A stretch of 64,000 bases of DNA, taken from positions 1-64,000 of IMG/VR virus record IMGVR_UViG_3300022200_000019. The stretch is one strand, 5' to 3'. This document shows, piece by piece, positions 32,200 to 63,495 of this stretch (positions are counted from its first letter, which is position 1; every line of letters starts with the position of its first letter). The notes below the pieces were generated by a model that ran no database searches, was not told the origin of the DNA, and saw nothing but the letters and a program-made list of their open reading frames with translations. A program made the position numbers and the translations under genes.

Positions 32200-32533
32200 T
32201 CAGATCCCCTTGTTTCCAGGGCGATTCGCTCTTATCAATTTCCACAACACAATTTAAACAAACACTACGCAGATTTGTGATTGTAGCATCGTTTAAATCG
32301 CCGTTGATATGAAACACCACAGTTTGTGATGCATACTTGGCCTTGAATCCACACAAGTCACAGGTTAATTTTTTCTGATATCCTGTTTGTTTCCATCTGG
32401 GCACAAACGGTTTTTTTCTTTTCCCCTGGCGATGACATGCTCCACACTTGGATCGATAGTGTGGTACTCCATCTTTGTGGTAATTTACAGCACATACCTG
32501 CTTTCCACACACTGAACACATGGGTCTTTTCAT
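32186..32533 (-). CDS. Zinc-finger / degenerate HNH-like protein
   Basis: CSVC...CGAC, then CDLCGF...VFHINGDLND....NLRSVCLNC; start refined to ATG 32533 (late box + 5 nt). Confidence 0.65.
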   Translation of the reverse strand: MKRPMCSVCGKQVCAVNYHKDGVPHYRSKCGACHRQGKRKKPFVPRWKQTGYQKKLTCDLCGFKAKYASQTVVFHINGDLNDATITNLRSVCLNCVVEIDKSESPWKQGDLIRDF

Positions 32534-32538
32534 GTGTT

Positions 32539-32546
32539 TATTTAGC
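32539..32546 (-). promoter_or_regulatory. Late box GCTAAATA, 5 nt before the ATG (leaderless)
   Basis: GCTAAATA-AACAC-ATG, no SD. Confidence 0.65.
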
Positions 32547-32594
32547 ATAAGGCCTTTGCAAAGCCTTGGTAACCGTGCTTTTTACAGTGTATTC

Positions 32595-32602
32595 AATAAA
32601 TA
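32595..32602 (+). promoter_or_regulatory. Late promoter box (AATAAATA) for gp18
   Basis: Followed by GAGGA RBS and ATG 32637. Confidence 0.6.
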
Positions 32603-32636
32603 GATATAACAACAATTTATTGTGAGGACAAACAAA

Positions 32637-35600
32637 ATGGCATTAATTTCTCCAGGCGTTGAAGTTTCGATTGTCGATGAAAGCGCATACCGTTCATCTG
32701 CTACAAACAGCGTTCCTTTTATTCTAATTGCTACAGCACAGAATAAAGTTAACGCAGCAGGCACAGGTGTTGCTGCTGGTACACTTGCTTCAAATGCTAA
32801 CGCTACTTATTTAATTTCAAGCCAACGAGAGCTTGTAAACACTTTTGGTAATCCGTTCTTCTATAACACTACCTCTGGTACACCAATCAATGGTTATGAA
32901 CTAAACGAATATGGATTATTGGCAGCATACTCAGTACTGGGAGTCAGCAACCGTGCATATGTACAGCGTGTTGATGTTGATTTGGCTGAATTGGCTGCTA
33001 GTTTAACTCGTCCAACTGGTGCGCCATCGACTGGAACTTGGTGGTTAGACACTACCGAAAGCACGTGGGGGATTTTTGAATGGAATGCAACTACTAATAC
33101 ATTTGCAAACAAAACTCCAATTGTAATTACCAATACATCTGATCTTACCGCAGGGGTTCCTAATTCCAGCATTGGAACAGTAGGATCGTACGCAGTAGTA
33201 GCTACTAATGTGAACAATCCAGTATACTATAAAAATATCAGCAACAATTGGGTGTTGGTTGGCAGTGATGATTGGAAAAATAGTGTTCCAGCAGTTAGCG
33301 GATCAACCGCTTCACCATCACTTGTGGCAGGTGAAACAGTTACACTTAACGGAACCACAGTTACATTAAGTGGCACAACTGTATCAAGTTTTGCAAGTGA
33401 TATTAACAGTGCTGGTATTTCTGGCATCACAGCAGCAGTAGTTAGTAATAAACTTGTGATTTATGTGGCAGATTTATATGTAACTGGTACAGAAAGTGAC
33501 AGTTCTGAAGATCACAGCGTAGTATTAGCCGATACGTCAGGAACCCCATTTGCAGATTGTGGTATCACTGTTGGCACATACAATGCACCAACATTGCAGT
33601 ACAGCACGCACGCAGTAATCCCACGTTGGAGAAGTTCAGATACTACTCCTAGACCTACTGGAAGTGTTTGGGCTAAAACCACAAATGTTAACAGCGGTGC
33701 AAATTTAAGTGTTAAGAGATATGATGCTACAGTTGGTACTTTTGTGAGCCAAAGCGTACCATTGTATGCAAATGATGCTGCTGCAAACTATGCATTAGAT
33801 GCTAGTGGCGGCGGTACAAACATCTCTGCAAACAGCACTTATGCAGAATATGATGTAACAAACAACAACAGTGCGCTAGTTAAAATTTATCAGCGCCAAG
33901 CAAGTGGAAACACAGTTGTTACTGGTAGCAGCACTAGTCCCACGTTTACTAATGGTGAAACATTTAGAATTAGTGCAAGCGTTGCGGGCAGTACTAGTAT
34001 GAGTACTCCTGTGTTAGCAACACTTGGTGGAACCACTGCATCTGATTTTGTCGCGGCAGTGTTAGCAGCTAATGTAGCTAACGTAACAGCAACGGTGTTA
34101 ACTTCAGGAGCAGTTAGAATTACCCATACACAAGGTGGTGTAATCCATCTGTGGGAAGAGTCAGGAACACCTGTTGCTGATGCTGGCATCACAACCAGTG
34201 TTGACGGGGTTCGTGTTCTGTATGAAGATGGTACCAATGTAGGATTGGTACTAAGCAATTGGGTTCCTCTGGAAAACCCAGATGGCACAGCATACTCTGC
34301 TAATAGCACAGCACCAGGACAAGATCCAACAGACGGCACTTACTGGTATTACAGTGCTATTGATGAAGTGGACATCATGATCAACGACAATGGTTCTTGG
34401 AAGGGTTATTTAAATGTAACCAACGATGTTCGTGGATTTGATTTATCTAATACCGATAGTTATGGCCCACAAGTCAGCGCAACAGCACCAACCACGCAAA
34501 GCACGGCTAGTGGTGGTGGAGCACTTGAATATGGTGATTTGTGGATTGACACATCAGATTTAGAAAATTATCCGTTAATTAAACGTTGGGAAAACGTCGA
34601 TGGATTAGATCAATGGGTATTAATTGACAATACAGATCAAACCACAAGCAATGGTGTTATATTTGCAGATGCACGCTGGGCAGCAAATGGGTCAACTGAT
34701 CCTGTAACTGATAGCATTCCAGATATTGCTGCAACATTATTGTCTAGTAATTATGTTGATATTGATTGTCCAAGCGCAGCATTGTATCCAGATGGAACAC
34801 TATTGTTCAATACTCGCCGTTCAGGTTATAATGTTAAAGCATTTAGATCAAACTACTTTAATTCAACTGATTTCCCAAATGATGCGTTGCCAACCATCAA
34901 GGATGCCTGGGTAACTGCTAGCGGAAACAAAAATGATGGCAGCCCGTACATGGGCCGTCAAGCACAACGTAGTATTATTATCGAAGCGATGAGAAGTGGA
35001 ATTGACTCAAATACTGAGATCCGTGAAGAACAGAGAGCGTTTAATCTAATTTCTGCACCAGGGTATCCTGAGCTGATTTCAAACATGGTGGCATTAAACA
35101 ATGACAGAAACAATACTGCTTTTGTTGTTGGTGATACCCCACTTCGCTTAGATGATAGTGGAAGTAGCTTAATTGGTTGGGCCACCAATAACGGTGGTGA
35201 AGGTGTTAGCACTGCTGATGGACTAGCAAATAATGATCCATATCTGGGTGTTTTCTACCCAAGTGGACAAACAAATGATCTGAGTGGTAACACAGTAGTA
35301 GTGCCTGCAAGTCATATGATGATTCGCACAATTGTACGCAATGACGAGATTGGTTATCCATGGTTAGCACCGGCTGGTGTACGACGCGGTACAATTGATA
35401 ATGTCAACGCACTAGGATATGTAAATGCACAGACTGGCGCATTTGTACAAATTGCAAACCGCAACAGTGTCCGCGATACACTTTACGAAAATAACGTTAA
35501 CCCGTTAACCTTTATTCCTGGATCGGGATTGGTTAACTATGGTAACAAGACCACACAAAGCGGAACAGCGTTGGATCGTATTAATGTAGCTCGATTGGTT

Positions 35601-35894: not shown

Positions 35895-35921
35895 TAGAAT
35901 AAATTATTATAATAACTTTAT

Positions 35922-35949
35922 AAGGGGCCTTAAATGGCCCCTTTTTTTT
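35922..35949 (+). terminator. Intrinsic terminator after gp18
   Basis: AAGGGGCC-TTAAAT-GGCCCCTT followed by a T-run. Confidence 0.88.
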
Positions 35950-35963
35950 GTTTGGGTGATTTG

Positions 35964-35971
35964 CATAAATA
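35964..35971 (+). promoter_or_regulatory. Late promoter box (CATAAATA) for the tail tube gene
   Basis: Followed by AGGAG RBS and ATG 36003. Confidence 0.7.
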
Positions 35972-36002
35972 ATAGCATATACTTTAATTAGGAGAAACAA
36001 AA

Positions 36003-36620
36003 ATGGCGGTTTCATCATTAACAAGAATGACAGTGCCTTTATCGAGCGATCAATCAAGCTCGACCCAAGGTCTATTAATGCCAAAACTAAAATATCGCTT
36101 TCGCGTTATTTTTGAAAACTTTGGTGTATCAACACCACGTACAGAATTAACAAAACAAGTAATTGACTTTGCTCGACCAAGCGTAAGTTTTGATGATATG
36201 ACAATTGATATCTACAACTCAAAAGTACGTTTAGCCGGTAAGCATACTTGGGATGACACTACAGTTAACTTACGTGACGATGCAGGCGGTAATGTGCAAA
36301 AACTAGTTGGCGAACAACTACAGAAACAATTTGACTTTATGGAAATGAGTTCAGCAAGTTCTGGTATTGATTACAAGTTCATTACACGTTGTGAAATCCT
36401 AGACGGCGGTAATGGTGCTAACGAACCAACTGTGTTAGAAACTTGGGAACTTTATGGTTGCTACTTAACCAGCGTTAACTATAACGATTTAGCATATAGC
36501 GAAAGTGCCCCGGTTACAATGGGCCTAAACATCCGCTTTGATAACGCACTACAAACTCCGCTAGAAACTGGATTAGGTGTAAACGTAGGACGCACACTGG
36601 GCACAGTAATCACTGGTTAA
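36003..36620 (+). CDS. gp19: Tail tube protein (gp19 family)
   Basis: PKLKYRFRV, RPSVSF...YNSKV.LAGKHTW, WELYGCY, LAY.ES.PV...L.IRFDNA. Confidence 0.9.
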   Translation: MAVSSLTRMTVPLSSDQSSSTQGLLMPKLKYRFRVIFENFGVSTPRTELTKQVIDFARPSVSFDDMTIDIYNSKVRLAGKHTWDDTTVNLRDDAGGNVQKLVGEQLQKQFDFMEMSSASSGIDYKFITRCEILDGGNGANEPTVLETWELYGCYLTSVNYNDLAYSESAPVTMGLNIRFDNALQTPLETGLGVNVGRTLGTVITG

Positions 36621-36626
36621 TAACCC

Positions 36627-38021: not shown

Positions 38022-38023
38022 CG

Positions 38024-38380
38024 ATGTCAAGTATCAATGTACAAAAATCATCACAACAGACTAAAATTTATGACAAATATTATAATGTGGAGTTTGTGAT
38101 ATCCACACAAGAATATGACATTGTGTATGCATATTTTAAAAAAGTCATGAATGAAGATGAAGAAGTGGCTAAGAATTTTACAGCTAGCATCTTTAAGTTG
38201 TCAAAAGATACTGGTGTTAGTGCGCTAACTTATTTGGAAAATCTTAAAGGCCAAGACGCAGTTCAGCTAAGTTTAACCATGACATATTATTTAAATCAGG
38301 TTCGTTCAAATTCAACACTGCTGGGTGTTGGACAAATAATAACACCTAATTTTTATGCAGCACGCAATGTAGTGAGCTGA
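38024..38380 (+). CDS. Hypothetical protein
   Basis: 118-aa ORF tightly packed in the tail/packaging operon. Confidence 0.55.
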   Translation: MSSINVQKSSQQTKIYDKYYNVEFVISTQEYDIVYAYFKKVMNEDEEVAKNFTASIFKLSKDTGVSALTYLENLKGQDAVQLSLTMTYYLNQVRSNSTLLGVGQIITPNFYAARNVVS

Positions 38381-38381
38381 C

Positions 38382-38810
38382 ATGGCACGAACTAAATTCT
38401 CACAAGGAGTTTACGAAGTTCGCAATGCTAACAAGTATGTGGGCAAAGGCAAACCACGCTATCGCAGCAGTTGGGAACTTTCATTCATGCATTTTTGTGA
38501 CAATAATGAACATATTTTACAATGGGCAAGCGAAGCCATTAGTATTCCATATCGCAATCCACTAACCGGAAAAGCTACACAATATGTTCCAGACTTTTTT
38601 GTTTTGTATCGAACAAAAAACAACAAACAAGTAGCTGAACTAATTGAAATTAAGCCCAAAGCACAATCCATGATAACTGAAAAACAAAACGCCAATCAAC
38701 GTGCTGTGGTGGCAGTAAATCACGCCAAATGGGAAGCTGCACGTGCCTGGTGTAAACGAAATAAGTTGATTTTTCGTGTAATTACTGAAGACCAGATCTT
38801 CCACCGCTAA
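38382..38810 (+). CDS. gp4: Head completion nuclease (gp4, TnsA-N-like)
   Basis: YRSSWE..FM.FCD.N..IL.W.SE.I.IPY.NP..GK...YVPDF...LIEIKP. Confidence 0.92.
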   Translation: MARTKFSQGVYEVRNANKYVGKGKPRYRSSWELSFMHFCDNNEHILQWASEAISIPYRNPLTGKATQYVPDFFVLYRTKNNKQVAELIEIKPKAQSMITEKQNANQRAVVAVNHAKWEAARAWCKRNKLIFRVITEDQIFHR

Positions 38811-38813
38811 ATA
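38806..38813 (+). promoter_or_regulatory. Late box GCTAAATA, 5 nt before the ATG (leaderless)
   Basis: GCTAAATA-TTTTC-ATG(38819), no SD. Confidence 0.65.
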
Positions 38814-38818: not shown

Positions 38819-39304
38819 ATGACTCGTAAACTCGAAGAACTTTTTGACTTGCCCTCAGCGTCTGCTGATGAAGAAGTAGACATTGTTAACGAACCTGAAG
38901 AATCATTTGGTGTTACACAAACATATGAAGGGTATAGCAATCTAGAAAAGATTGATGCTGCGCTGCCTGCTGTTAAAAATCTCGAAGCAAGCGACAAAGA
39001 AATGGATCAACTTGCTGAAACAGCGATGAAAACATATCAAGACTTAGTTGATTTGGGTATGAATGTTGAAGCACGCTTTAGTTCAGAAATCTTCAGTGTG
39101 GCAAGCTCATTACTTGGGCACGCTATAACTGCTAAAACTGCCAAAATGAACAAGAAACTTAAAATGATTGATCTGCAATTAAAGAAAGCAAAACTAGACG
39201 CAGACAGGGGCGATGCTGAAAGCGAGACAGCAAGTGGTCACGTATTAGATCGTAACGAACTTCTTGAAAAACTATTGAATCCAAATAAGAACAATGACGC
39301 ATAA
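38819..39304 (+). CDS. Putative terminase small subunit (gp16-like)
   Basis: Helical core (EIFSVASSLL..AITAK..K..KKLKMIDLQLKK); size and position next to gp4 fit; assignment is an inference. Confidence 0.5.
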   Translation: MTRKLEELFDLPSASADEEVDIVNEPEESFGVTQTYEGYSNLEKIDAALPAVKNLEASDKEMDQLAETAMKTYQDLVDLGMNVEARFSSEIFSVASSLLGHAITAKTAKMNKKLKMIDLQLKKAKLDADRGDAESETASGHVLDRNELLEKLLNPNKNNDA

Positions 39305-39307
39305 ATA
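39300..39307 (+). promoter_or_regulatory. Late promoter box (CATAAATA)
   Basis: Followed by AGGAG RBS and ATG 39331. Confidence 0.65.
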
Positions 39308-39330: not shown

Positions 39331-39885
39331 ATGCGCTCGCTATCAGAATTTTTAACAGAATCAAAAAAATCATACACTTATCGTATTAAAATTGCAGGTG
39401 ATCTGCCCAAAGAACATGTGGATTCACTTAAAAAACTTTTTGCAAAGTTTGATATGACCAACATGAGTGATATTAAAAAAACACCAGTAATGAAATGTCC
39501 ATATGATTTCCCAGATATGGAAAACGAGTCAGTAAATATCATGGACGTTACTTTTGATTATCCAGCAAGTTCGCTACAATTACAGGAACTCATGCAGCCA
39601 TTGGGTATAAACCCAAATCGCGTCAAAATCATGAGTAATACCTTTGCAGATAGCATTGATATTGAAGCTGAATCAAAAGAACATGAAGGTGCCTTGCTTG
39701 ATGATGCAACGCTTCCTGAAACTACAGCAGAGCAAAAAGCGGCCGGCGAAGAATATGCCAAACCTGGCGAGCAACGTGCATCTGAAATGGAAACACGTGA
39801 ATATGAGTTCTCTGCTCCAAAAACACCTCGAGCTCAGACCACAAGTGATTTACCACAAGGCACAAAAAGCCCCATGGGGAGTTAA
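39331..39885 (+). CDS. Putative internal head protein
   Basis: Begins MRSLSEFLTE|S, a T4-type prohead-protease motif. Confidence 0.45.
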   Translation: MRSLSEFLTESKKSYTYRIKIAGDLPKEHVDSLKKLFAKFDMTNMSDIKKTPVMKCPYDFPDMENESVNIMDVTFDYPASSLQLQELMQPLGINPNRVKIMSNTFADSIDIEAESKEHEGALLDDATLPETTAEQKAAGEEYAKPGEQRASEMETREYEFSAPKTPRAQTTSDLPQGTKSPMGS

Positions 39886-41551: not shown

Positions 41552-42543
41552 TGAAAAAACTCGCTGATTACATTTTGAATTCACAAAAACCACGCATTAA
41601 TGATAGCGTGATTATCAACGTCAACAATGAATATGTAATCGAAAGCAAAGTCACAGATGTATCAGATCGTATTACCATTGTAATGGATGCTGCAACAAAA
41701 GAATTATTAAAGCATGCACAAGCAAACCCGGTTAATGAAGGATCTGTTGTAGACTTTGATCGAATTGGTCGTTATAGCGCATGGGGACGTGCATTATTAC
41801 AGGTATTGAAATACTCTAATAACCCTAAGATCATGGATAAACACACAACGGATAATGACGTTGTTCTTGTTATACGTGATAATATCTTAAATCAAATACT
41901 AGAAAAAGAGACAGACGGAAAAATTACTTCTAATCAGATTGCCATGTATGCAAAAGCAATTCCAGAATTAGATTATCAGTGGGCACCTAAAAACAAACAG
42001 CACGTAATCACAATGCCTCGTGATTTAAAACTAGTATCGTTATCAAAACCAGATAAAACCAATGAAAATGAATTAACATTTGAAAATAATACATGGCATT
42101 TGAATATCTGGACCAGCAAACCAGTTAGCAAGATTGTTTCTGAAATCAAGCAACAACTAAACAATGTTTTGTTAGAGACTAACCAAAGAGCACCCAAATC
42201 AGGAAAACGTGTGGGTAACATGCCATTAAATTATTGGGAAGCGAACCCCGGATCAGTATACACTGCTGACAAGTATTATGATATGTATCGTGCCAGCATG
42301 ATTATTGGACGGTTACCTGAAGATCCAGGTGATCTGGATGTATACAGTTGGATCAACAATGCGCCAATGATGGTTACATATACTCCTGAGGAGCTTGAAA
42401 TGGCTAAAACAGCATTTAAGTTTATGGGAATTCCAATGAGGACGCACGTACCCCCAGGCAGTGACGAACCAGATGCTGTAAATAAAGTGTCACCATTTAA
42501 ACCATTTAAAGGATATAAAGGCGCTCAGCGTCGTTCTAAATAA
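41551..42543 (+). CDS. Hypothetical (putative internal head) protein
   Basis: VNE|G and LLE|T motifs; C-terminal DEPDAVNKVSPFKPFKGY segment. Confidence 0.4.
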   Translation: MKKLADYILNSQKPRINDSVIINVNNEYVIESKVTDVSDRITIVMDAATKELLKHAQANPVNEGSVVDFDRIGRYSAWGRALLQVLKYSNNPKIMDKHTTDNDVVLVIRDNILNQILEKETDGKITSNQIAMYAKAIPELDYQWAPKNKQHVITMPRDLKLVSLSKPDKTNENELTFENNTWHLNIWTSKPVSKIVSEIKQQLNNVLLETNQRAPKSGKRVGNMPLNYWEANPGSVYTADKYYDMYRASMIIGRLPEDPGDLDVYSWINNAPMMVTYTPEELEMAKTAFKFMGIPMRTHVPPGSDEPDAVNKVSPFKPFKGYKGAQRRSK

Positions 42544-42551
42544 GTATTTGC

Positions 42552-43691
42552 ATGAGCAAAACCTACTGTGCTGCTCCCTGGCACGGCCTTCACATCAATT
42601 CATTCGGAAATGTAAAAACCTGCTGCGCAGGCGATCCTAACATATTTGGTGATCTAAATACACAGAGTATTCAAGATATTCTGTTTGGTGAAAAAATGCA
42701 AGAATTACGTGCTACTCTTAGAGAAGGTCGTATGCATGAGCAATACTGCTACAATTGTATTCAAGCAGAACGATATGGTCGTAGCGAAAGATACTGGCAC
42801 AACGAGGTAAGCAAAGACTTCGATTGTTCACAAGCAGAGTTAGATTACCACCGACCCGTTCTAGTTGATGTTCGCTGGAATATTACCTGCAATCAGAGTT
42901 GTAATTACTGTGGGGATAAATGTAGTTCAAAATGGGCAGCATTAAACGGTATTCCGTTTAAATCGCAGGTGCGTCCTTATTATCAACAAGTGCATGATTA
43001 TTTAGAGCAGTATCAGGTTTGGATGCGAGAGATAGCACTGGTCGGTGGTGAACCTTTGTTGTTACCAGAAAATGAGCGACTATTAGACATTGTGCCAGAT
43101 GGTGTTACTATTACTGTTATTACTAATTTTAGTGTAGAGCTATCCGATAATAAAATATTTGAAAAACTATCAAACCGCAAGAATGTTGGCTGGAGTTTGA
43201 GTTTTGACAACATAGGCAAACGTTATGAATATGTCAGATACGGTGGCAAATTTGCACAGCTAGAACGTAATATAGAATCACTCAAGCCTTTATTTAACCA
43301 AGGCCACTGGGCCGGTATTCATGCAGTATACAATTTATATAATTGCACACATCTAAATGAATTTACTGATTGGGCAAAAAGTCACAATCTATCAATACAA
43401 TGGCAAAGCCTATATCAACCAGAATGTCTAGATCCACTAAAGCACAACAATGAAGTTAGAAAGCTAGCACACACAGAACTCGAACAACTATTAAAAAGAA
43501 CAGATTTAACCGATAGCGAGCGCAACTTCTTTGAAACAGCACTAAATAATTTTAACAGTGCTGAAGAACAAGACGAGTCAGCAAAGCTCGCACAGCACGT
43601 AAATGATATAGAGACACTATATCACTCCGATAAAGCAGGCCAATTTCATAAGTTGTGGCCTGAACTGGTTTGTGCCTTAGGACCATTATAG
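42552..43691 (+). CDS. Radical SAM protein with N-terminal auxiliary Fe-S (SPASM/twitch-like) region
   Basis: CNQSCNYC (CxxxCxxC), GGEPLL; N-terminal CAAPW...TCC...CYNC. Confidence 0.92.
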   Translation: MSKTYCAAPWHGLHINSFGNVKTCCAGDPNIFGDLNTQSIQDILFGEKMQELRATLREGRMHEQYCYNCIQAERYGRSERYWHNEVSKDFDCSQAELDYHRPVLVDVRWNITCNQSCNYCGDKCSSKWAALNGIPFKSQVRPYYQQVHDYLEQYQVWMREIALVGGEPLLLPENERLLDIVPDGVTITVITNFSVELSDNKIFEKLSNRKNVGWSLSFDNIGKRYEYVRYGGKFAQLERNIESLKPLFNQGHWAGIHAVYNLYNCTHLNEFTDWAKSHNLSIQWQSLYQPECLDPLKHNNEVRKLAHTELEQLLKRTDLTDSERNFFETALNNFNSAEEQDESAKLAQHVNDIETLYHSDKAGQFHKLWPELVCALGPL

Positions 43692-43773: not shown

Positions 43774-43796
43774 AGCCCGTGAAAACGGGCTTTTTT
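43774..43796. terminator. Intrinsic terminator between convergent genes
   Basis: AGCCCGT-GAAA-ACGGGCT followed by TTTTT. Confidence 0.9.
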
Positions 43797-44337
43797 ATCG
43801 CTGATTAACGACAATAGGATCTTGTTCTAGATTTAAATATTGCGCCCAGGAAGGGTGGTTAATGCGAAGTTGTGTTTTACGTATTGAATTTGCCAATTGA
43901 TAGTAGTCTGGTGTAAACGGAGCACGTTTAGGTTTAATCAATTTGTCGCTTTTGTCCCAATTGCATGGTTTACAAGCAGTTACACAATTATCCCATTCTG
44001 TTTTGCCGCCCATGCTTTTGGGAACAACATGATCAATGGTTAGTTGCGCTGGTACAAATGTGTCGCCGCAATATTGACACTGGAACATGTCACGAACATA
44101 CAGATTTGTTCTACTAAATGTTTTTGTTTTGCGTTTAGTATAACCGCTCTTTAGTGCAATTACACTAGGAACACGCATGACAGTTTTTTGGCTATGAACC
44201 GCCCAATCATCGTACCACTCTAGTACATGAACTTTTTCTAAAAACAAGAGTTTAACTGCTTGCTGCCAGTGAACAGCACTAAGTGGGATATAACTTAATG
44301 GTTGGTAATCTGGACCTAAAACTAATGTGTGAGCCAT
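43795..44337 (-). CDS. HNH endonuclease
   Basis: CQYCG...LTIDHVVPKSMGGKTEWDNCVTACKPCNWDK. Confidence 0.93.
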   Translation of the reverse strand: MAHTLVLGPDYQPLSYIPLSAVHWQQAVKLLFLEKVHVLEWYDDWAVHSQKTVMRVPSVIALKSGYTKRKTKTFSRTNLYVRDMFQCQYCGDTFVPAQLTIDHVVPKSMGGKTEWDNCVTACKPCNWDKSDKLIKPKRAPFTPDYYQLANSIRKTQLRINHPSWAQYLNLEQDPIVVNQR

Positions 44338-44341: not shown

Positions 44342-44357
44342 GTATTTAATTAAATAC
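44342..44357. promoter_or_regulatory. Perfect 16-bp palindrome forming back-to-back late boxes for HNH (-) and gp17 (+)
   Basis: GTATTTAATTAAATAC carries ATTAAATA on both strands; the minus copy is 5 nt before the HNH ATG. Confidence 0.7.
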
Positions 44358-44376: not shown

Positions 44377-45942
44377 ATGTCCAAGAGTCTTGACGGAGTA
44401 CTTACAAAACGTGCCCATATAAGGATGAATTATACTCCTGAACAAATACAGGAGTTTGCAAAATGTGCTGATCCAGTATCTGGCCCATTTTATTTCATGG
44501 ACAATTTTTTCCACATTCAGCATCCTACCAAGGGCAAGATGAACTATCATCCGTTTGAATATCAGAAACACCTGATCGACACCTATCATAATTACAGATT
44601 TAGTATTAGCCTGATGCCCAGACAAACTGGCAAAAGCACCAGCGCAGCGGGTTACTTGTTGTGGTACGGTATGTTTAAACCTGATTCGACTATTCTTATT
44701 GCTGCACACAAATACGCTGGAGCACAGGAAATTATGCAGCGTATTCGTTATGCGTATGAATTGTGTCCAGATCATATACGTGCAGGTGTAACTTCATACA
44801 ACAAGGGATCAATTGAGTTTGATAATGGATCGCGCATTGTGGCGCAAGCAACTACAGAAAATACTGGACGTGGTATGAGTATTACACTACTTTACGCAGA
44901 TGAATTTGCATTTGTGCGGCCTACTATTGCAAAAGAATTCTGGACTAGTATTTCACCAACACTTGCAACAGGCGGTAAGGCTATTATTACAAGTACGCCT
45001 AACTCGGACGAAGACCAATTTGCACTAATTTGGAAACAGGCAAATAAAACTGAGGATGAGTTTGGCAATGAAACAGAGCTGGGCATTAATGGGTTTCGTG
45101 CATACAGAGCTCACTGGAGTGAACATCCAGACAGAGACGAAAAATGGGCAGCAGAAGAACGTGGGCGCATTGGTGAAGAACGATTCCGACGCGAGCATGA
45201 ATGTGAATTCATTATCAACGATGAGACTCTTATTAATGCTACAACACTGGTAGATCTGGAAGGTACAGAACCAGTGCGCAAGACAGGACAAGTTCGCTGG
45301 TATGATGAAGTTAAGAAAAATCACATATATGTGGTTGCACTGGATCCCAGCCTGGGCACAGGAGGCGATCCTGCTGCAATACAAGTTTTTGATGCAAATA
45401 CCACTGTGCAGGTTGCAGAATGGAAACATAACAAAACACCTATTCCAACACAGATACGTATTCTCAACGATATTGTAAAAGCAATTTACGAAAAAACACA
45501 AGACGGTACGAGCATTTATTACTCAATTGAAAATAACACAATTGGCGAAGCAGCACTTATTAGTTTAGCAGAGTTTGGTGAAGACAACTTCCCAGGTATG
45601 ATGTTAAGTGAACCTAAATCAGCAGGAACAGGAAGACGTTTCCGCAAAGGATTTAATACTACTAACAAATCTAAAATTTCTGCCTGCGCTAAACTTAAAA
45701 ACTTAGTTGAAACTAAGAAAATGATAGTAAACAGCAAAAGTCTTATTTCTGAATTTAAGACGTTTGTAGCACATGGTACAAGTTATGCTGCTAAAATTGG
45801 CGAAACTGACGATTTAGTAATGGCAACTGTTCTTGCTGTGCGTATGATGCAAGTACTTCAAAACTATCATGCAGAACTTAACACACAAATTGCTGATTTT
45901 GGTGATGAAGAAATTCCCCCTATGCCATTTATAATGTTTTGA
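44377..45942 (+). CDS. gp17: Terminase large subunit
   Basis: Walker A PRQTGKST, Walker B LLYADEFAF, ITSTPN, nuclease ALDPSLGTGGD and DDLVMA; no intein seen. Confidence 0.98.
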   Translation: MSKSLDGVLTKRAHIRMNYTPEQIQEFAKCADPVSGPFYFMDNFFHIQHPTKGKMNYHPFEYQKHLIDTYHNYRFSISLMPRQTGKSTSAAGYLLWYGMFKPDSTILIAAHKYAGAQEIMQRIRYAYELCPDHIRAGVTSYNKGSIEFDNGSRIVAQATTENTGRGMSITLLYADEFAFVRPTIAKEFWTSISPTLATGGKAIITSTPNSDEDQFALIWKQANKTEDEFGNETELGINGFRAYRAHWSEHPDRDEKWAAEERGRIGEERFRREHECEFIINDETLINATTLVDLEGTEPVRKTGQVRWYDEVKKNHIYVVALDPSLGTGGDPAAIQVFDANTTVQVAEWKHNKTPIPTQIRILNDIVKAIYEKTQDGTSIYYSIENNTIGEAALISLAEFGEDNFPGMMLSEPKSAGTGRRFRKGFNTTNKSKISACAKLKNLVETKKMIVNSKSLISEFKTFVAHGTSYAAKIGETDDLVMATVLAVRMMQVLQNYHAELNTQIADFGDEEIPPMPFIMF

Positions 45943-49662: not shown

Positions 49663-49688
49663 GCTCAAGCGATATACGCTAAAACACA

Positions 49689-49711
49689 ACGGGCCCAATG
49701 GGCCCGTTTTT
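49689..49711 (+). terminator. Intrinsic terminator
   Basis: ACGGGCCC-AAT-GGGCCCGT followed by TTTT. Confidence 0.88.
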
Positions 49712-49712
49712 C

Positions 49713-49720
49713 GTTAAATA
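49713..49720 (+). promoter_or_regulatory. Late box GTTAAATA, 5 nt before the ATG (leaderless)
   Basis: GTTAAATA-ATTTT-ATG(49726), no SD. Confidence 0.6.
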
Positions 49721-49725: not shown

Positions 49726-50595
49726 ATGCATGCAGTAGCACTTATAAACTATCCAGGACATTTCTTATCAACACTGGGAACCATTAAAAATTTCCTGGAA
49801 ATAACCAAATGGCGACCGCCTTGGTATATTTTTGTAGATGATCTAGGACCACAGTGGGAAGCCTGGCCAGATTATCTAAACGATCTAAAATCAGCAATTG
49901 ATTTAAACTTTCCCAATCTAAATCCAACCTATATTTTATTCTCAGAATTTGAATTCCCCTATGTGTGGGATGGATGGTTAAGGCAGCAAATGGTAAAACT
50001 TAATCTGGATAGATTCTTACCAGGAGATCTTTGGTATGTAACAGACGGAGATGTTGTCTGTGAAAGGTTAATCAGCGCCAACGAAATACCATATAACTAT
50101 CAAACAACACATAATCCTCTTATTAACGCACAACAGTATACATATATTAAGCATATGCTAGGCATAGATGAAAAATTAAAATTACACAACGAAGATGTAT
50201 ATACACACCACATTCCAGTGCGTTGGGTTAGCCGAGATGATTTGCACGGACTTTACAGACATGTATCAGATACGGTGGGCAATGACGCAAATATTGCGCA
50301 TTTTAATCTAATGCGCGAAGAATGTATCATAGGTTATGGTCCAACATCCGAACATATGAGCATGACAGAATGGGACTTGCTAGAAACCTGGCGAATATTA
50401 ATAGATGGCCAAACATCCAATTTTCGATATTGGGTTATCGACGATGGCGCAGTGCCCAGACAAAACGTACCGGTTACACGCTTAAAGACATTTTTTGGCA
50501 CAGATCGGGACTTTTCTCAAGAATATTTTGAAAAACAAGGATTACAGGTGCCTACAGACGCATGGGAAAAGGTTTGTGAAATTTCTCGCACATAA
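49726..50595 (+). CDS. GT-A-like protein (DUF6492-like)
   Basis: GWLRQQMVKL signature followed by a DxD-like motif (WYVTDGD). Confidence 0.6.
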   Translation: MHAVALINYPGHFLSTLGTIKNFLEITKWRPPWYIFVDDLGPQWEAWPDYLNDLKSAIDLNFPNLNPTYILFSEFEFPYVWDGWLRQQMVKLNLDRFLPGDLWYVTDGDVVCERLISANEIPYNYQTTHNPLINAQQYTYIKHMLGIDEKLKLHNEDVYTHHIPVRWVSRDDLHGLYRHVSDTVGNDANIAHFNLMREECIIGYGPTSEHMSMTEWDLLETWRILIDGQTSNFRYWVIDDGAVPRQNVPVTRLKTFFGTDRDFSQEYFEKQGLQVPTDAWEKVCEISRT

Positions 50596-56609: not shown

Positions 56610-56617
56610 AATAAATA
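56610..56617 (+). promoter_or_regulatory. Late box AATAAATA, 5 nt before the pseudogene ATG
   Basis: AATAAATA-CTACA-ATG(56623). Confidence 0.6.
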
Positions 56618-56622
56618 CTACA

Positions 56623-56775
56623 ATGAAAATTGTAGTAGTCACCGGGGCGTTAGCCCTATCTACAGAGAACATACCCGCTAGCTACAAGCAGCAAAAGCGT
56701 TAGCGCATACTTAAATGTGAGCGTTAATACTGATGATTGTTTTGTTAGCGAAAGTAAGTGGATTGTACGGTAATC
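56623..56775 (+). pseudogene. Decayed cytidylyltransferase (HIGH-motif, RfaE-C/TagD-like)
   Basis: MKIVVVTG, frameshift, PIYREHTR*LQAAKAL, frameshift, AYLNVSVNTDDCFVS; mirrors the family pattern MKIVxxTGGFDPxHxGHxxYLxAAKxLGDxLxVGVNSDxW. Confidence 0.75.
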
Positions 56776-56803
56776 GCTGCAAAGAAAAAGATAAAGGAAG
56801 ATT

Positions 56804-57981: not shown

Positions 57982-57996
57982 TAAAAAGAAAATACA

Positions 57997-60524: not shown

Positions 60525-61472
60525 ATGAACACAGTTGCAGTATATGTAAGCGGCGTTCCTGCTAAAACGAAACATACCGAAAAGCGAGAGCTATTGCATC
60601 GTTTTGGCCGAGGTGTTAAACGAGCTGGGGATAAATTAAAAATCGTTGACGGATTTCAGGTGTTAGATGCTGACATAGCGGTAATTCAGGGCTGGATCGG
60701 TATGAAAATTGGCGCACACTTAAAATTGCGTGAAACAGTAATTAATTATCAACGACAACGCGGTAAGCACACACTTGTTATTGATAGAAATTTATTTGGA
60801 TTTTTAAATCCAAATAACAGAGATCAATACTTGTGTTATAGTTTAGATGGCATTTTTCCAACAACTGGTTTTTATTTTAATACTCGTATTGACAAGCAAC
60901 GGTGGGAATCTATTAAACGTAATTACGGATTTACAGAACGTCCTTGGAAACAAGGAGATAATATTTTAATTACATTACAACGTAATCATGGGTGGAGTAT
61001 GGGACAGCAGCTTAGTGTTCAAGATTGGTTAAACAAAATTGTTCCCGAAATACGTCAATACACAGATCGACCAATTGTTATACGACCACATCCTGGCGAT
61101 GAGAAAACAATAAGAACACTTCGAATAACTGACAGGAATTGGAGATTTAGTAGCGAAGCGGATATCCGAGGAGATTTTGAGAATGCCTGGGCAACAGTAA
61201 CATATAACTCAAGCCCAGGAGCCGCTAGTTTAATTTGGGGTGTTCCAGCTTTTGTAACAGATCCTGAACCAGAAAGAAGTCAATCTTATCCATGGGCAAG
61301 TGCTGATTTGTCAACCATTGCGCAACCTTATATGCCAGACCGCAGACAATTTTATAATATAATTAGCCAGAGTCATTTTAATAACAACGAAATCGAATCA
61401 GGAGAAGCGTGGGCATTTATGAGGGAGAGATTAGCCGATGCTCCTAAAACACCAATCACTCCAATTCGTTAA
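60525..61472 (+). CDS. KpsS/Capsule_synth-like GT-B protein (paralogue 3)
   Basis: TDRPIVIRPHP; AWATVTYNSSPGAASLIWGVP; SQSHF...EI.SG.AW. Confidence 0.6.
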   Translation: MNTVAVYVSGVPAKTKHTEKRELLHRFGRGVKRAGDKLKIVDGFQVLDADIAVIQGWIGMKIGAHLKLRETVINYQRQRGKHTLVIDRNLFGFLNPNNRDQYLCYSLDGIFPTTGFYFNTRIDKQRWESIKRNYGFTERPWKQGDNILITLQRNHGWSMGQQLSVQDWLNKIVPEIRQYTDRPIVIRPHPGDEKTIRTLRITDRNWRFSSEADIRGDFENAWATVTYNSSPGAASLIWGVPAFVTDPEPERSQSYPWASADLSTIAQPYMPDRRQFYNIISQSHFNNNEIESGEAWAFMRERLADAPKTPITPIR

Positions 61473-61475
61473 CTA

Positions 61476-62042
61476 TTAAATATATTTGGTGTTAACAAAA
61501 CATAGCCCGCTATTAAGTACCCAGGCTTTTTTCTTTTTCTTTAAATTCATAGTAGTTGCCTGTTTAACCTGGGCTGTTAGATCACTGTTAAATTCTAACC
61601 CATAATCACTGAAAGTTTTAATCCAATATTCTGCTGGTTTTAGATTAACGTGATGATATCCGTTTGGGTCTTGGCTATACGTCATTGTAACATATTTTGC
61701 TTGTTGAAATGCTGGCATGTACATGGGAACATATTCTTCATGTACATGCTCTACAAATTCGCAACTCCATGCTAAATCAAATTCTTCGTTAATTGGTGCT
61801 GGGCCTGAGGTAAAATCATGTAAGATAAATGACTCCGCAGGCGAACGGTTGATAGTGAAATCACCATCGACTCCAATAGCGTATAAATCCATTTCTTGAG
61901 CCAAATTTACCATTCCGCCTGGACCACAGCCGATGTCCAACATTGATTTAATGTTAAACGTAGATTTAAAAAATTCTAATGTACCAACATCTAAATGTGT
62001 TTTATTTTGATGCCCACCTAAATGTTTAGGAAGTTCTTTCAT
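61476..62042 (-). CDS. Class I SAM-dependent methyltransferase
   Basis: MLDIGCGPG, GVDGD, FDLAWSCEFVEHV, GYHHVN. Confidence 0.9.
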   Translation of the reverse strand: MKELPKHLGGHQNKTHLDVGTLEFFKSTFNIKSMLDIGCGPGGMVNLAQEMDLYAIGVDGDFTINRSPAESFILHDFTSGPAPINEEFDLAWSCEFVEHVHEEYVPMYMPAFQQAKYVTMTYSQDPNGYHHVNLKPAEYWIKTFSDYGLEFNSDLTAQVKQATTMNLKKKKKAWVLNSGLCFVNTKYI

Positions 62043-62664
62043 TACAATACTTTATCCATTGGTCTTTAGTGATATCAAGATACCAAGCACGCAGTGGTTT
62101 TCCAACCTTCTCACCATTGGGTCGTTGATTTGAAAACCACGCAAATCCTTTCTCAAGTAACCATGATGTCGCCCACCGATCTCGTTTTGCAGTCCAGTTC
62201 ATTTTCATAAACACTCGATTAGTGTAATTAAAGATATCGTTTAAGAAATATTCCCAATCGCCTGCGTCTTTGTCAAATGCTCGGTCAAATTCGGTGCGAG
62301 TGGCAAAAATAATGTCATAGTGTTTTGGTAGATTCATCGGAGTTTGTGGATGAATCCATAATTCGTATCGATTAACACCTAATAAATCACAACATTCTTT
62401 AAATAATCCGTCTTGTACATCAGTACAATCGCATTCGATTCCTCGTTCACGCAAAATAGCAGCAAGGACGCCAATTCCTGCTCCTATATCTAGCGCAGTT
62501 TTAACATTATCAATTCCGCCGTTTCTACTGTTAGCATAGTCAACAACATGTTGTTTTTCTTCATAATACCAATCCCATTTACGTCCGTATTTTGCTCCTG
62601 ACTGATATTTGTCAACTTCAAAACATCTTTTGATAACCGCTTGTTTATAATCGTCAAGTGTCAT
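62026..62664 (-). CDS. Class I SAM-dependent methyltransferase
   Basis: ALDIGAGIG, CTDV, YDIIFA. Confidence 0.8.
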   Translation of the reverse strand: MTLDDYKQAVIKRCFEVDKYQSGAKYGRKWDWYYEEKQHVVDYANSRNGGIDNVKTALDIGAGIGVLAAILRERGIECDCTDVQDGLFKECCDLLGVNRYELWIHPQTPMNLPKHYDIIFATRTEFDRAFDKDAGDWEYFLNDIFNYTNRVFMKMNWTAKRDRWATSWLLEKGFAWFSNQRPNGEKVGKPLRAWYLDITKDQWIKYCNERTS

Positions 62665-62671
62665 GATGACT

Positions 62672-62679
62672 TATTTATT
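62672..62679 (-). promoter_or_regulatory. Late box AATAAATA, 7 nt before the 62664 ATG
   Basis: AATAAATA-AGTCATC-ATG on the minus strand, no SD. Confidence 0.45.
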
Positions 62680-63481
62680 GCCAATAAGGTTCTGCTCGGT
62701 TGACCTTGAGATCTTTTGCCTTGCTACGACCAAGTTCTTTGCGTTTACCTTTTAAATGATCCAGATACGCACCCCACTCGGTATTAATGAGTGGATGCCC
62801 TTCACCACCGTCTAAATGTGCTGACCAATCCTGGTTGTGCATTTCAGGCATACGTCCTCGAACAATATCAAAAACATAACTATCATGCCACTCTTTAAGT
62901 GTAAAGATACCGTTTTCTGCATCTTCGTACATATGTTCAAAGTTTTCTAAAAACTTACTAGCATTTGCATGTTCTAAATTTATTGCGTATAAACCGCATT
63001 CGGTATACTTTTTGCCACGACCTAAATAACTCATATCATATTGTTCAGGAATCAAGCGTTTGATCGTCTGCATTGAAATTGGACTGTGGCAATAGTTATC
63101 GCCGTCCATCCATACAAGAATTCCATCCTTCACTTCTTCAGCACACGCAAAAATGGCATATACCTTGTGAGCAAATCTAATGGCATCCCATTTAAATGCT
63201 TTTTTGCCATCTTTGCGGTCTGTTCTTGAAGGATCGGTATCATTATGCCCAGTAGCACGAGGATCATTCTTCCAGCGTTCTTTAAACGCCACAAGTTTTG
63301 GACTTGCTGTATTTAAATTTCTAACAATCAAATTGGGTGCGCTTTCTGCAACATCAAAGCCTTCTGCGTACACATAGAGTGCAATTTCAGATGGCCAATT
63401 TTGGAGAAATGATTGAACCATACGCTTTCCATATAAGTCATATCCGTTTTTGTTAAATGTAGTAACTACTGTATATTGCAT
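62675..63481 (-). CDS. Glycosyltransferase-like protein (GT-A, DxD)
   Basis: VVTTF...GY..YG.RMV.SF, KWDAIRFAHKVYAI, LVWMDGD, ECG.YAIN, EWHDSYVFD..R, DHLKG.RK. Confidence 0.75.
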   Translation of the reverse strand: MQYTVVTTFNKNGYDLYGKRMVQSFLQNWPSEIALYVYAEGFDVAESAPNLIVRNLNTASPKLVAFKERWKNDPRATGHNDTDPSRTDRKDGKKAFKWDAIRFAHKVYAIFACAEEVKDGILVWMDGDNYCHSPISMQTIKRLIPEQYDMSYLGRGKKYTECGLYAINLEHANASKFLENFEHMYEDAENGIFTLKEWHDSYVFDIVRGRMPEMHNQDWSAHLDGGEGHPLINTEWGAYLDHLKGKRKELGRSKAKDLKVNRAEPYWQ

Positions 63482-63487
63482 AATTAA

Positions 63488-63495
63488 TATTTATA
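63488..63495 (-). promoter_or_regulatory. Perfect TATAAATA late box, 6 nt before the 63481 ATG
   Basis: TATAAATA-TTAATT-ATG on the minus strand, no SD. Confidence 0.7.

What the first reader, a model, noticed from the sequence alone, without database searches (positions are those of the whole stretch)
32533..63495. Recurrent TAAATA-N5-ATG architecture implies leaderless late mRNAs
Seen: a late box exactly 5 nt before an SD-less ATG at 32533(-), 38819(+), 44337(-), 49726(+) and 56623(+); 6 nt at 63481(-); 7 nt at 62664(-). Major structural genes (2691, 21670, 29658, 32637, 36003, 39331) instead have the box followed by a leader with an AGGA-type SD. A sigma70 promoter likewise puts +1 on the GTG at 30914. 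Known: the T4 late box lies at about -13 to -6, so the A of ATG would be +1. Inference: two translation tiers, with SD-led mRNA for abundant parts and leaderless mRNA for enzymes and minor proteins. This may also hint at a host rich in leaderless transcripts.
Basis: partly seen in the sequence, partly recalled or inferred. Interest (0 to 1): 0.62.

Follow-up and report, generated by a model that had tools for sequence, protein, structure and literature searches.

The report
Late promoters fused to start codons
In this giant phage and its environmental relatives, about a third of the promoters sit so close to a gene's ATG that the mRNA should begin at the start codon with no ribosome-binding leader, and this layout is conserved across many relatives but absent from T4 and the enterobacterial relative CBB.

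Summary
All seven sites exist as written. The pattern is far beyond chance. In the 213-kb record, TAAATA ends 4-7 nt before 18 gene starts. The box-to-start distance is bimodal: a sharp peak at 4-7 nt (mode 5), almost nothing at 8-16, and a broad peak at 17-45. Genes in the 4-7 class never have a Shine-Dalgarno (SD) site; 60-78% of the 17-45 class do.

Orthologues in IMG/VR relatives keep the spacing: 47/47 for gene 38819 and 8/8 for 44337. Single genes flip between about 5 nt and about 20 nt with an SD, never in between. Near-consensus sigma70 promoters show the same fusion with a mode of 6 nt, as their -10 geometry predicts.

The phage belongs to the Rak2/GAP32/CBB jumbo group, where ATAAATA is already the predicted late promoter. 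CBB has 0 of 53 boxes in the fused position, and T4 shows no enrichment.

The best reading is leaderless or near-leaderless mRNAs from both promoter classes, as a lineage- or host-specific design. No RNA data could be obtained, so start sites remain inferred. The abundance-tier idea holds only loosely. Site 56623 more likely heads a structured RNA.

The parts
32539..32544 (-). Late box TAAATA, N5, then ATG at 32533 (115-aa protein with a weak HNH-like match). A conserved hairpin lies upstream of the box.
   Evidence: In orthologues 18 of 25 keep the box at N4/N5, and at least 3 of the other 7 carry the variant TAAGTA at N5. PHROG match.
38808..38813 (+). Late box TAAATA, N5, then ATG at 38819 (161-aa conserved protein next to the tail tube genes). 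The box's TAA is also the stop codon of gene 38382..38810.
   Evidence: All 47 distinct relatives (55-100% aa identity) have the box at N4 or N5 with no SD, while the position of the upstream stop codon varies.
42541..42546 (+). Variant box TAAGTA (ATAAGTA), N5, then ATG at 42552 (radical SAM protein). It overlaps a TAAATA that sits at N9.
   Evidence: Relatives carry ATAAGTA-N5-ATG or TAAATA-N4-6-ATG. PHROG match.
44343..44348 (-). Late box TAAATA, N5, then ATG at 44337 (HNH endonuclease). It lies back to back with the terminase box, 2 nt apart.
   Evidence: All 8 orthologues keep N5. In L026 and L028 both divergent genes are N5, within a 24-nt intergenic region.
44351..44356 (+). Late box TAAATA, 20-nt spacer with an AAGG SD-like element, then ATG at 44377 (terminase large subunit).
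   Evidence: In relatives the same gene has the box at N5-7 (7 cases) or N19-20 (2 cases), and never in between.
49686..49720 (+). Terminator hairpin with a T-run (49686-49714), followed directly by the box TAAATA (49715-49720), N5, then ATG at 49726 (289-aa protein of unknown function).
   Evidence: Relatives at 78% aa identity keep the hairpin through compensatory changes. They have a 5-nt indel upstream of the box, an unchanged N5 spacing, and 4 of the 5 spacer bases changed.
56612..56617 (+). Box ATAAATA, N5, then ATG at 56623. The ORF has only 26 codons and the ATG lies in a 7-bp hairpin. This is probably the promoter of a structured 186-nt leader or non-coding RNA ahead of gene 56804.
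   Evidence: The fold has z = -3.8. In 4 relatives the 56804 orthologue itself has the box at N5.
62672..62677 (-). Late box TAAATA, N7, then ATG at 62664 (212 aa). The box's TAA is the stop codon of gene 62675..63481.
   Evidence: A relative at 96% aa identity (L170) has a 10-nt insertion carrying GAGG, which converts N7 to an SD-led N17.
63488..63495 (-). Full TATAAATA box, N6, then ATG at 63481 (268 aa).
   Evidence: Relatives at 58-85% identity keep N5/N6. More distant relatives have N25-32 with an SD, or no box at all.
30879..30916 (+). Perfect sigma70-type promoter TTGACA-N17-TATAAT, N6, then GTG at 30914 (253-aa accessory gene with no orthologue in the held relatives).
   Evidence: No SD precedes the next in-frame ATGs, and GTG is the only start codon upstream of the N-terminal KKIVLVWPP strand.
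2664..2671 (+). SD-led late promoter: TATAAATA, 19-nt spacer with AAGGA, then ATG at 2691.
21641..21646 (+). SD-led late promoter: box, 23 nt with CAGGA, then ATG at 21670 (tail fibre or minor tail protein).
29628..29633 (+). SD-led late promoter: box, 24 nt with AAGGA, then ATG at 29658 (head-tail adaptor).
   Evidence: All 15 orthologues have the box at 17-25 nt.
32597..32602 (+). SD-led late promoter: box, 34 nt with GAGGA, then ATG at 32637 (tail sheath).
   Evidence: All 25 orthologues have the box at 26-34 nt.
35966..35971 (+). SD-led late promoter: box, 31 nt with AGGAG, then ATG at 36003 (tail tube).
   Evidence: All 35 orthologues have the box at 18-39 nt.
39302..39307 (+). SD-led late promoter: box, 23 nt with AGGAG, then ATG at 39331 (virion structural protein). 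The box's TAA is the stop codon of gene 38819..39304.
   Evidence: All 44 orthologues have the box at 17-24 nt.

Best explanation
TAAATA, often (T)ATAAATA, is the -10-like late promoter of this Rak2/GAP32/CBB-group jumbo phage. It is most likely read by host RNA polymerase carrying a phage gp55-family sigma factor.

The promoter is used in two discrete layouts.
- Leadered: the box lies 17-45 nt upstream of the ATG. The transcript starts about 6 nt after the box, usually at an A preceded by T, and carries a leader of about 12-40 nt with an AGGAG-type SD.
- Fused: the box ends 4-7 nt (mode 5) before an SD-less ATG. The same start-site rule then puts +1 on, or within 1-2 nt of, the A of the ATG. 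This gives a leaderless or near-leaderless mRNA that has to be translated by direct ribosome recognition of a 5'-terminal AUG.

The host-type sigma70 early promoters of the phage are used in the same two layouts, with TATAAT-N6-ATG as the fused form.

The design belongs to this environmental lineage. Individual genes switch between the two layouts during evolution. The design is absent from enterobacterial relatives, which points to a host, or a phage-modified ribosome, that translates leaderless mRNA well.

Shown here: the motif, its spacing, the absence of an SD, the conservation, and the lineage restriction. Inferred: the transcription start sites, the sigma factor used in this particular genome, and translation from the 5' end.
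For: Bimodal spacing. Box-to-start distance in G000 gives 18 genes at 4-7 nt, 4 at 8-16 nt and 33 at 17-45 nt. G002 gives 30/6/36 and G003 gives 16/10/27.

No SD in the fused class. None of the fused genes has an SD with dG <= -5, against 60-78% of leadered genes (MWU P = 5e-7 to 2e-8).

Only two signals at that position. Just SD-type hexamers and TAAATA are enriched 4-7 nt before starts: 64 against 1.5 expected.

Same promoter in both layouts. Both classes share the A preceding the box. Leadered boxes carry T at the 5th and A at the 6th base after the box (67% A in G000). That is the position occupied by the A of the ATG in the N5 class. It matches the T4 geometry of a box at -13 to -6.

Orthologue conservation. 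Gene 38819 keeps the fused spacing in 47/47 relatives, 44337 in 8/8, and 32533 in 18/25 plus TAAGTA variants at N5. Sheath, tube, adaptor and 39331 are always leadered. Operon-internal genes have no box.

Discrete flips.
- Gene 45973: 11 fused against 5 leadered.
- Terminase: 7 fused against 2 leadered.
- Gene 63481: N5-6 against N25-32.
- Gene 62664: a 10-nt insertion carrying GAGG converts N7 to N17 at 96% aa identity.

Places with no room for anything else.
- A terminator is followed directly by box-N5-ATG at 49726 and at G000 160751.
- A 24-nt divergent intergenic region reads CAT-N5-TATTTA-cg-TAAATA-N5-ATG in L026 and L028.

A second promoter class behaves alike. Start codons fused to near-consensus TTGACA/TATAAT promoters number 8/36 in G000, 8/58 in G002 and 6/41 in G003, with a mode of N6.

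Lineage contrast. CBB has 0 of 53 late boxes and 1 ATG among 96 sigma70 promoters in the fused position. T4 shows no enrichment.

Sigma factor. A gp55-like sigma is present in G002 and G003, in the synteny sigma-gp47-gp46-portal-MCP. ATAAATA is already the predicted late promoter in CBB and GAP32.
Against: No RNA evidence of any kind was obtained.

No gp55-like sigma, gp33 or gp45 was found in the held 213 kb. The sigma is inferred from synteny to lie beyond the left end of the contig.

Spacings of N4, N6 and N7 need some start-site flexibility, or 1-2-nt leaders. In E. coli such leaders weaken leaderless translation (my own knowledge of the field, not tested here).

About half of the fused genes follow a same-strand gene that ends within 25 nt, so they could also be translated by coupling from read-through transcripts.

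One fused site (56623) is probably not a coding start. The 30914 case would need a 5'-terminal GUG.

The host is unknown.
Confidence: 0.7

Rival explanations
1. The boxes are real promoters, but the adjacent gene is not translated from the transcript they start. It is translated from read-through polycistronic mRNA by termination-reinitiation or 70S coupling. The box sits there only because the genome is compact, and it serves the downstream genes.
For: In 33 of 64 fused cases a same-strand gene ends within 25 nt of the start. In 12 of 64 the box's TAA is that gene's stop codon. Site 38819 and site 62664 are examples.
Against: In 31 of 64 cases no same-strand gene ends within 25 nt. These include starts directly after terminators and starts in divergent intergenic regions.

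In the 38819 orthologues the upstream stop codon moves while the box-to-ATG spacing stays at 4-5 nt.

Compaction alone predicts a smooth spread of spacings. It does not predict a peak at 5 with gaps at 0-3 and 8-16.

Tightly packed genes without a box carry SDs inside the upstream gene (class C).
Confidence: 0.13
2. In the fused position TAAATA acts at the RNA level. It would be an A/U-rich, SD-independent ribosome-recruiting element (for example an S1-binding element) rather than a promoter.
For: The box occupies exactly the place where an SD would sit, and it is mutually exclusive with SDs. A/U-rich leaders are known translation enhancers (my own knowledge of the field).
Against: The identical heptamer is found 17-45 nt upstream of SD-led genes, with a T-A start-site signature 5-6 nt downstream. 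There it cannot be replacing an SD.

S1 binding is not known to be base-specific, yet the hexamer is invariant across 47 diverged orthologues.

Sigma70-type -10 boxes show the same fusion, shifted by 1 nt as promoter geometry predicts. A translational role for TAAATA would not explain that.
Confidence: 0.07
3. The motif marks an RNA processing site. An endonuclease cut in or near UAAAUA, sometimes presented in a small hairpin loop, would generate mRNAs whose 5' end lies next to the AUG.
For: Short inverted repeats flank the fused boxes in GC-richer relatives. At least 4 bp are present in 30% of the 38819 orthologues against 3% of shuffles.
Against: The window's own sites mostly lack the inverted repeat. 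The motif matches a known promoter class. Processing does not explain the sigma70-type fusions or the divergent back-to-back boxes.
Confidence: 0.05
4. The pattern is chance in an A+T-rich genome, or an artefact of start-codon calling.
For: TAAATA is a short A+T-rich hexamer. At N6 its TAA is in frame with the ATG and so makes that ATG the first start of the ORF.
Against: P is about 1e-15 in this genome and about 1e-78 when pooled. Permuted-hexamer controls are about 7-fold lower. The peak is at N5, not at N6. The histogram made without gene calls shows the same peak. Orthologue alignments begin at these ATGs.
Confidence: 0.02

Closest known systems
Bacteriophage T4 late promoters (TATAAATA at -13 to -6, gp55 sigma with gp33 and the gp45 clamp)
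   Same: The core motif is the same ((T)ATAAATA). No conserved -35 element is seen. The motif sits in front of virion genes, and the sequence downstream of the box is A/T-rich. The T/A signature at the 5th and 6th bases after the box fits T4's box-to-+1 distance. Relatives encode a gp55-family sigma.
   Different: T4 shows no enrichment of box-N3-9-ATG: 6 hits against 11 for the reversed control. No gp33 or gp45 homologue was found here or in the relatives. Here the leading T of the octamer is usually missing: there are only 13 TATAAATA in 213 kb.
Predicted ATAAATA late promoter of Pectobacterium phage CBB and Cronobacter phage GAP32 (PMC5259590)
   Same: The phage group is the same: the major capsid protein is 64% identical to CBB's. 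The heptamer is the same, it precedes structural genes, and the phage has a gp55-like sigma without gp33 or gp45.
   Different: In CBB none of the 53 boxes near gene starts lies 4-7 nt from the start, and all are leadered. In this lineage about one third are fused to the ATG.
Lambda cI mRNA from PRM and other single leaderless phage mRNAs (PMC10491246)
   Same: The promoter is placed so that +1 is the A of the AUG. There is no SD, and translation runs from a 5'-terminal AUG.
   Different: Lambda has a single regulatory gene of this kind. Here there are dozens of genes per genome, spread over two promoter classes, and they include late and structural genes.
Leaderless-rich bacteria such as mycobacteria (PMC4633059)
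   Same: A sizeable fraction of genes have a -10 element placed a fixed short distance from an SD-less start codon, alongside SD-led genes.
   Different: That is a property of cellular genomes. Here it is seen in a phage whose host is unknown and whose close enterobacterial relatives lack it.
Jumbo phages with mapped transcription start sites (phiKZ, PMC8244752; AR9, PMC5312081)
   Same: They are also giant phages with several promoter classes.
   Different: phiKZ showed no leaderless transcript. AR9 5' UTRs are 26-491 nt long. Both use their own multisubunit RNA polymerases rather than a gp55-type sigma.

Membership tests
T4-type (gp55-dependent) late promoter | A conserved (T)ATAAATA -10-like box upstream of late or virion genes. 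| tested here: met
   TAAATA occurs 19 times against 1.5 expected near starts. ATAAATA is the consensus. The box is found before the sheath, tube, adaptor and fibre genes and is conserved in their orthologues.
T4-type (gp55-dependent) late promoter | No conserved -35 element. | tested here: met
   No position in the 8 nt upstream of the box reaches consensus apart from the A next to the box. Positions further upstream were inspected only by eye.
T4-type (gp55-dependent) late promoter | The phage encodes a gp55-family sigma factor. | tested here: inconclusive
   None was found in the held 213 kb. One is present in the near-complete relatives G002 and G003, upstream of the portal and MCP genes. 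This contig begins at the MCP gene, so the syntenic position lies off its left end.
T4-type (gp55-dependent) late promoter | A gp33 co-activator and a gp45 sliding-clamp activator. | tested here: not met
   There is no hit with the T4 proteins or with phrog_223 in G000, and none with the T4 proteins in G002 or G003. The same was reported for CBB.
T4-type (gp55-dependent) late promoter | Transcription starts about 6 nt after the last A of the box. | not testable with these tools
   There are no RNA data. The only indirect sign is T at the 5th and A at the 6th base after leadered boxes.
Leaderless mRNA | The primary 5' end lies at, or within a few nt of, the start codon. | not testable with these tools
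   This is predicted from the box-N4-7-ATG and TATAAT-N5-8-ATG geometry, but it was not observed.
Leaderless mRNA | No Shine-Dalgarno sequence upstream of the start. | tested here: met
   None of the 64 fused genes has an anti-SD duplex with dG <= -5 kcal/mol, against 60-78% of leadered genes.
Leaderless mRNA | AUG as the start codon. | tested here: met
   All 18 fused late genes in G000 start with ATG, as do 28 of 30 in G002. The exception is the sigma70-fused GTG at 30914.
Translational coupling / termination-reinitiation | An upstream ORF on the same strand ends at, or within a few nt of, the start codon. | tested here: not met
   This holds for only 33 of 64 fused genes. The other 31 have no same-strand gene ending within 25 nt.

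The most novel reading that the evidence does not exclude
The lineage runs a dedicated leaderless translation channel. Late in infection the phage would alter the host ribosome so that 5'-terminal-AUG mRNAs are favoured. The alteration could come through its own bS21 (G000 98969..99202, itself behind a TATAAATA-N6-ATG) or through another factor. The promoter-to-ATG fusion would then be a phage-specific way to privilege or time the translation of a third of its genes, and not just a reflection of a leaderless-tolerant host.
Probability: 0.1. Interest if true: 0.85.

Novelty: new variant of a known kind. Interest (0 to 1): 0.62.

Why it matters
Leaderless mRNAs in phages are known as isolated cases such as lambda cI. 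The jumbo phages with mapped start sites showed none (phiKZ) or long leaders (AR9).

Here a T4-type late promoter and the host-type early promoter are both fused to start codons at dozens of genes per genome. The layout is conserved across many environmental relatives and is missing in enterobacterial cousins.

If confirmed, this has several uses.
- It gives a sequence-only rule for start-codon and promoter annotation in a large group of uncultured giant phages. Gene callers that rely on SD sites will mis-start these genes.
- It provides a natural series of on/off switches between leaderless and SD-led expression of the same gene.
- It offers a handle on host translation biology, and perhaps on the role of phage-encoded bS21.

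Tried and rejected
- Megablast of 8 kb against the phage collection found nothing.
- T4 gp55 and gp45 as single queries, phrog_234, phrog_12791 and phrog_223, and T4 gp33 and CBB_244 by tblastn found no convincing hit in the 213 kb. Two weak hits near 142.3-142.6 kb are not colinear and I judged them spurious.
- Host inference from the phage bS21 through genome contigs gave only two 46% matches to Holospora, which is uninformative. The host is left unknown.
- bS21 as the cause of the layout is not supported as a requirement. G002 has 30 fused genes and no bS21.
- No structure prediction, complex prediction or large protein search was run, because the claim does not rest on them.
- Literature searches for leaderless late mRNAs in T4-like or jumbo phages found no prior description in the held library. 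That library is incomplete.

Full report
**What the window is.** The window is the first 64 kb of a 212,917-bp IMG/VR virus record. CheckV rates it 61% complete, and it has 39% G+C. My ORF-based gene calls give 248 genes, 229 of them on the + strand. The major capsid protein (65..1255) is 64% identical to that of Pectobacterium phage CBB. The tail sheath is 42-45% identical to those of PA5oct and Atu_ph07. So this is a jumbo myovirus of the Rak2/GAP32/CBB/PA5oct group, distantly related to T4. The window encodes sheath, tube, adaptor, terminase, fibre-like giants, two HNH endonucleases and a radical SAM protein.

**Checking the observation.** So are the SD-led examples and the TTGACA-N17-TATAAT-N6-GTG at 30879-30916.
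- The full T4 octamer TATAAATA is rare, with 13 copies in the genome. The working motif is TAAATA, usually ATAAATA.
- A histogram of TAAATA-to-ATG spacing that uses no gene calls peaks at 4-6 nt on the coding strand: 6, 8 and 8 against a background of about 2.5.
- Among all hexamers lying -18..-3 from gene starts, TAAATA (19 against 1.5 expected, P about 6e-15) is equal top with the SD hexamers AAGGAG and AGGAGT.
- Composition-matched permutations of the hexamer average 2.7 genes at 4-7 nt, against 18 for TAAATA.

**Anatomy.** The distance from the box to the gene start is bimodal.
- The fused class has 18 genes at 4-7 nt (3, 7, 4 and 4 genes).
- Only 4 genes fall at 8-16 nt.
- The leadered class has about 33 genes at 17-45 nt.

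The two classes differ in SD use. None of the fused genes has an anti-SD duplex of -5 kcal/mol or better, against 65% of leadered genes.

Both classes share the A that precedes the box. In the leadered class the 5th and 6th bases after the box are T (55%) and A (67%), a pyrimidine-purine start-site signature. That is the position of the A of the ATG in the N5 class. It also agrees with the T4 geometry, where the first T of the box is at -13 and the last A at -6. The empty zone at 8-16 nt is what one expects if a leader must be either absent or long enough to hold an SD plus its spacing.

**Could it be translational coupling?** In 6 of the 18 fused genes the box's TAA is the stop codon of the upstream gene, and 38819 is one of them. 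Several leadered boxes show the same overlap. Pooled over three genomes, 31 of 64 fused genes have no same-strand gene ending within 25 nt. Several cases leave no room for coupling:
- At 49726, and at 160751 in the wider genome, a terminator hairpin is followed directly by box-N5-ATG.
- At 44337/44377 two boxes sit back to back, 2 nt apart, in a 39-nt divergent region.
- In relatives L026 and L028 that divergent region shrinks to 24 nt and reads CAT-N5-TATTTA-cg-TAAATA-N5-ATG.

**Relatives.** Three scans of viral contigs gave 133 loci. The main results are:

| Gene | Layout in relatives |
|---|---|
| 38819 | box at N4 or N5 in all 47 distinct relatives (55-100% aa identity); no SD; spacer sequence and upstream stop position vary |
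| 44337 | N5 in 8/8 |
| 32533 | N4/N5 in 18/25; TAAGTA at N5 in at least 3 of the other 7 |
| 49726 | N5 kept; 4 of 5 spacer bases changed; 5-nt indel placed upstream of the box |
| sheath (32637) | always leadered, 25/25 |
| tube (36003) | always leadered, 35/35 |
| adaptor (29658) | always leadered, 15/15 |
| 39331 | always leadered, 44/44 |
| operon-internal genes | no box |

The TAAGTA variant also identifies 42552 as a fused site.

Individual genes also switch between the two states and skip the middle ground:
- 45973 is fused in 11 relatives and leadered in 5.
- The terminase large subunit is fused in 7 and leadered in 2.
- 63481 has N5-6 in close relatives and N25-32 with an SD in distant ones.
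- 62664 has N7 here. A relative at 96% aa identity has N17, through a 10-nt insertion that brings in GAGG.

**Whole-genome comparison.** I fetched two near-complete relatives, G002 (345 kb) and G003 (316 kb), plus CBB.

| Genome | Boxes at 4-7 nt | 8-16 nt | 17-45 nt |
|---|---|---|---|
| G000 (this record) | 18 | 4 | 33 |
| G002 | 30 | 6 | 36 |
| G003 | 16 | 10 | 27 |
| CBB | 0 | 6 | 53 |

In the three lineage genomes pooled, the only hexamers enriched 4-7 nt before starts are SD-type hexamers and TAAATA (64 against 1.5 expected). In CBB only SD-type hexamers are enriched. T4 shows no enrichment of ATAAATA-N3-9-ATG: 6 hits against 11 for the reversed control.

**A second promoter class behaves the same way.** The genome has 12 perfect TTGACA-N16-18-TATAAT promoters. 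Among promoters with at most one mismatch, a start codon opening an ORF of at least 50 codons lies 4-8 nt after the -10 box in these numbers:
- G000: 8 of 36, including 30879 to the GTG at 30914.
- G002: 8 of 58.
- G003: 6 of 41.
- CBB: only one ATG among 96.

The mode is N6, one base longer than for the late box. That is expected, because the sigma70 -10 hexamer ends at -7 and the late box ends at -6. Two unrelated promoter types that each place +1 on a start codon are hard to explain by any RNA-level role of TAAATA.

**The sigma factor.** No gp55, gp33 or gp45 homologue was found in the held 213 kb. G002 and G003 both encode a gp55-like sigma. It is 37-38% identical to CBB_244, and T4 gp55 matches it at E about 2e-5. 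It lies in the order sigma, gp47, gp46, portal, MCP. This contig starts at the MCP gene, so the expected position lies beyond its left end. The CBB paper had already predicted ATAAATA as the late promoter, together with a gp55-like sigma lacking gp33 and gp45.

**Interpretation.** The best-supported reading is that both promoter classes come in two versions, leadered with an SD and fused to the start codon. The fused version would give leaderless or 1-2-nt-leader mRNAs.

The most abundant tail proteins are always SD-led. The fused class includes the following:
- HNH endonucleases.
- Radical SAM proteins.
- Ribosomal protein bS21.
- Many small proteins of unknown function.
- Virion structural proteins at 75876 and 160751.
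- In relatives, the portal (N7 in G002), the terminase and the 1229-aa structural protein.

Site 56623 is the weak member. Its ORF has 26 codons, and its ATG sits in a 7-bp hairpin at the 5' end of a 186-nt stretch that folds with z = -3.8. It more likely heads a structured leader or non-coding RNA for gene 56804.

At 30914 the GTG is the only start codon upstream of a conserved-looking N-terminal strand, and the next ATGs lack SDs. A 5'-terminal GUG is therefore plausible but unusual.

**Novelty.** Leaderless mRNA and T4-type late promoters are each well known, and the ATAAATA motif had been predicted for this phage group. The systematic fusion of these promoters to start codons appears to be undescribed. 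So does its strict spacing, its flipping among orthologues and its restriction to one lineage. Searches of the held literature found nothing on it. The jumbo phages with mapped start sites showed no leaderless transcripts (phiKZ) or long leaders (AR9). I therefore rate it a new variant of a known kind.

Noticed in passing
G000:C1:98969-99202 (outside the window; held as locus L151): The phage encodes a ribosomal protein bS21 (77 aa, phrog_21469, E = 5e-13), itself behind a TATAAATA-N6-ATG. A homologue is present in G003 but not in G002 or CBB. bS21 supports the anti-SD, and in E. coli its absence favours leaderless translation (PMC10491246). Phage bS21 expression is reported to be linked to late-stage replication (PMC9723584).
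   Followed up: partly
window 1320-1396 (+): There is an Rfam match to the freshwater-2 RNA motif (RF02980, 56.6 bits against a gathering score of 49.9). It lies in the gap between the major capsid gene (65..1255) and the next gene (1394..).
   Followed up: no
window 56618-56803 (+): A 186-nt intergenic stretch downstream of a late box folds unusually well (-53.6 kcal/mol, z = -3.8). It begins with the hairpin CTACAAT-gaaa-ATTGTAG, which contains the ATG at 56623. It is a candidate structured leader or non-coding RNA for gene 56804.
   Followed up: partly
L053, L063, L076 and others; G002 159798(-); G003 7172(+): In GC-richer relatives, short inverted repeats flank fused boxes (for example gcggTAAATAccgcATG). 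Stems of at least 4 bp occur in 30% of the 38819 orthologues against 3% of shuffles, and in none of the orthologues of three SD-led genes (sheath, tube, 39331). The SD-led adaptor gene 29658 shows them in 27% of 15 orthologues, against 6% of shuffles. The function is unknown, and the cases are not phylogenetically independent.
   Followed up: partly
window 32186-32533 (-) and 43795-44337 (-): Two HNH-type endonuclease genes lie on the minus strand inside the otherwise plus-strand tail and terminase module. Each is driven by a fused late box. The 32533 gene is conserved at this position in 25 relatives, behind a conserved hairpin.
   Followed up: partly
window 27663-27691 and 30879-30907; ten more in G000: There are twelve perfect-consensus TTGACA-N16-18-TATAAT promoters in 213 kb. 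Two of them lie inside the late structural region of the window. The one at 27663 is followed by a 29-nt leader with AGGAG before the ATG at 27721.
   Followed up: partly
window 62662-62677 (-) compared with L170: A relative at 96% aa identity carries a 10-nt insertion containing GAGG between the box and the ATG of the 62664 orthologue. This turns an N7 fused promoter into an N17 SD-led one, and so acts as a natural switch experiment.
   Followed up: yes
window 13481-20635 (+): A 2384-aa ORF, the largest in the window, lies among other giant fibre-like genes (850, 1264 and 958 aa). It is preceded by a terminator-like hairpin, a late box at N41 and an SD. I did not characterise it further.
   Followed up: no
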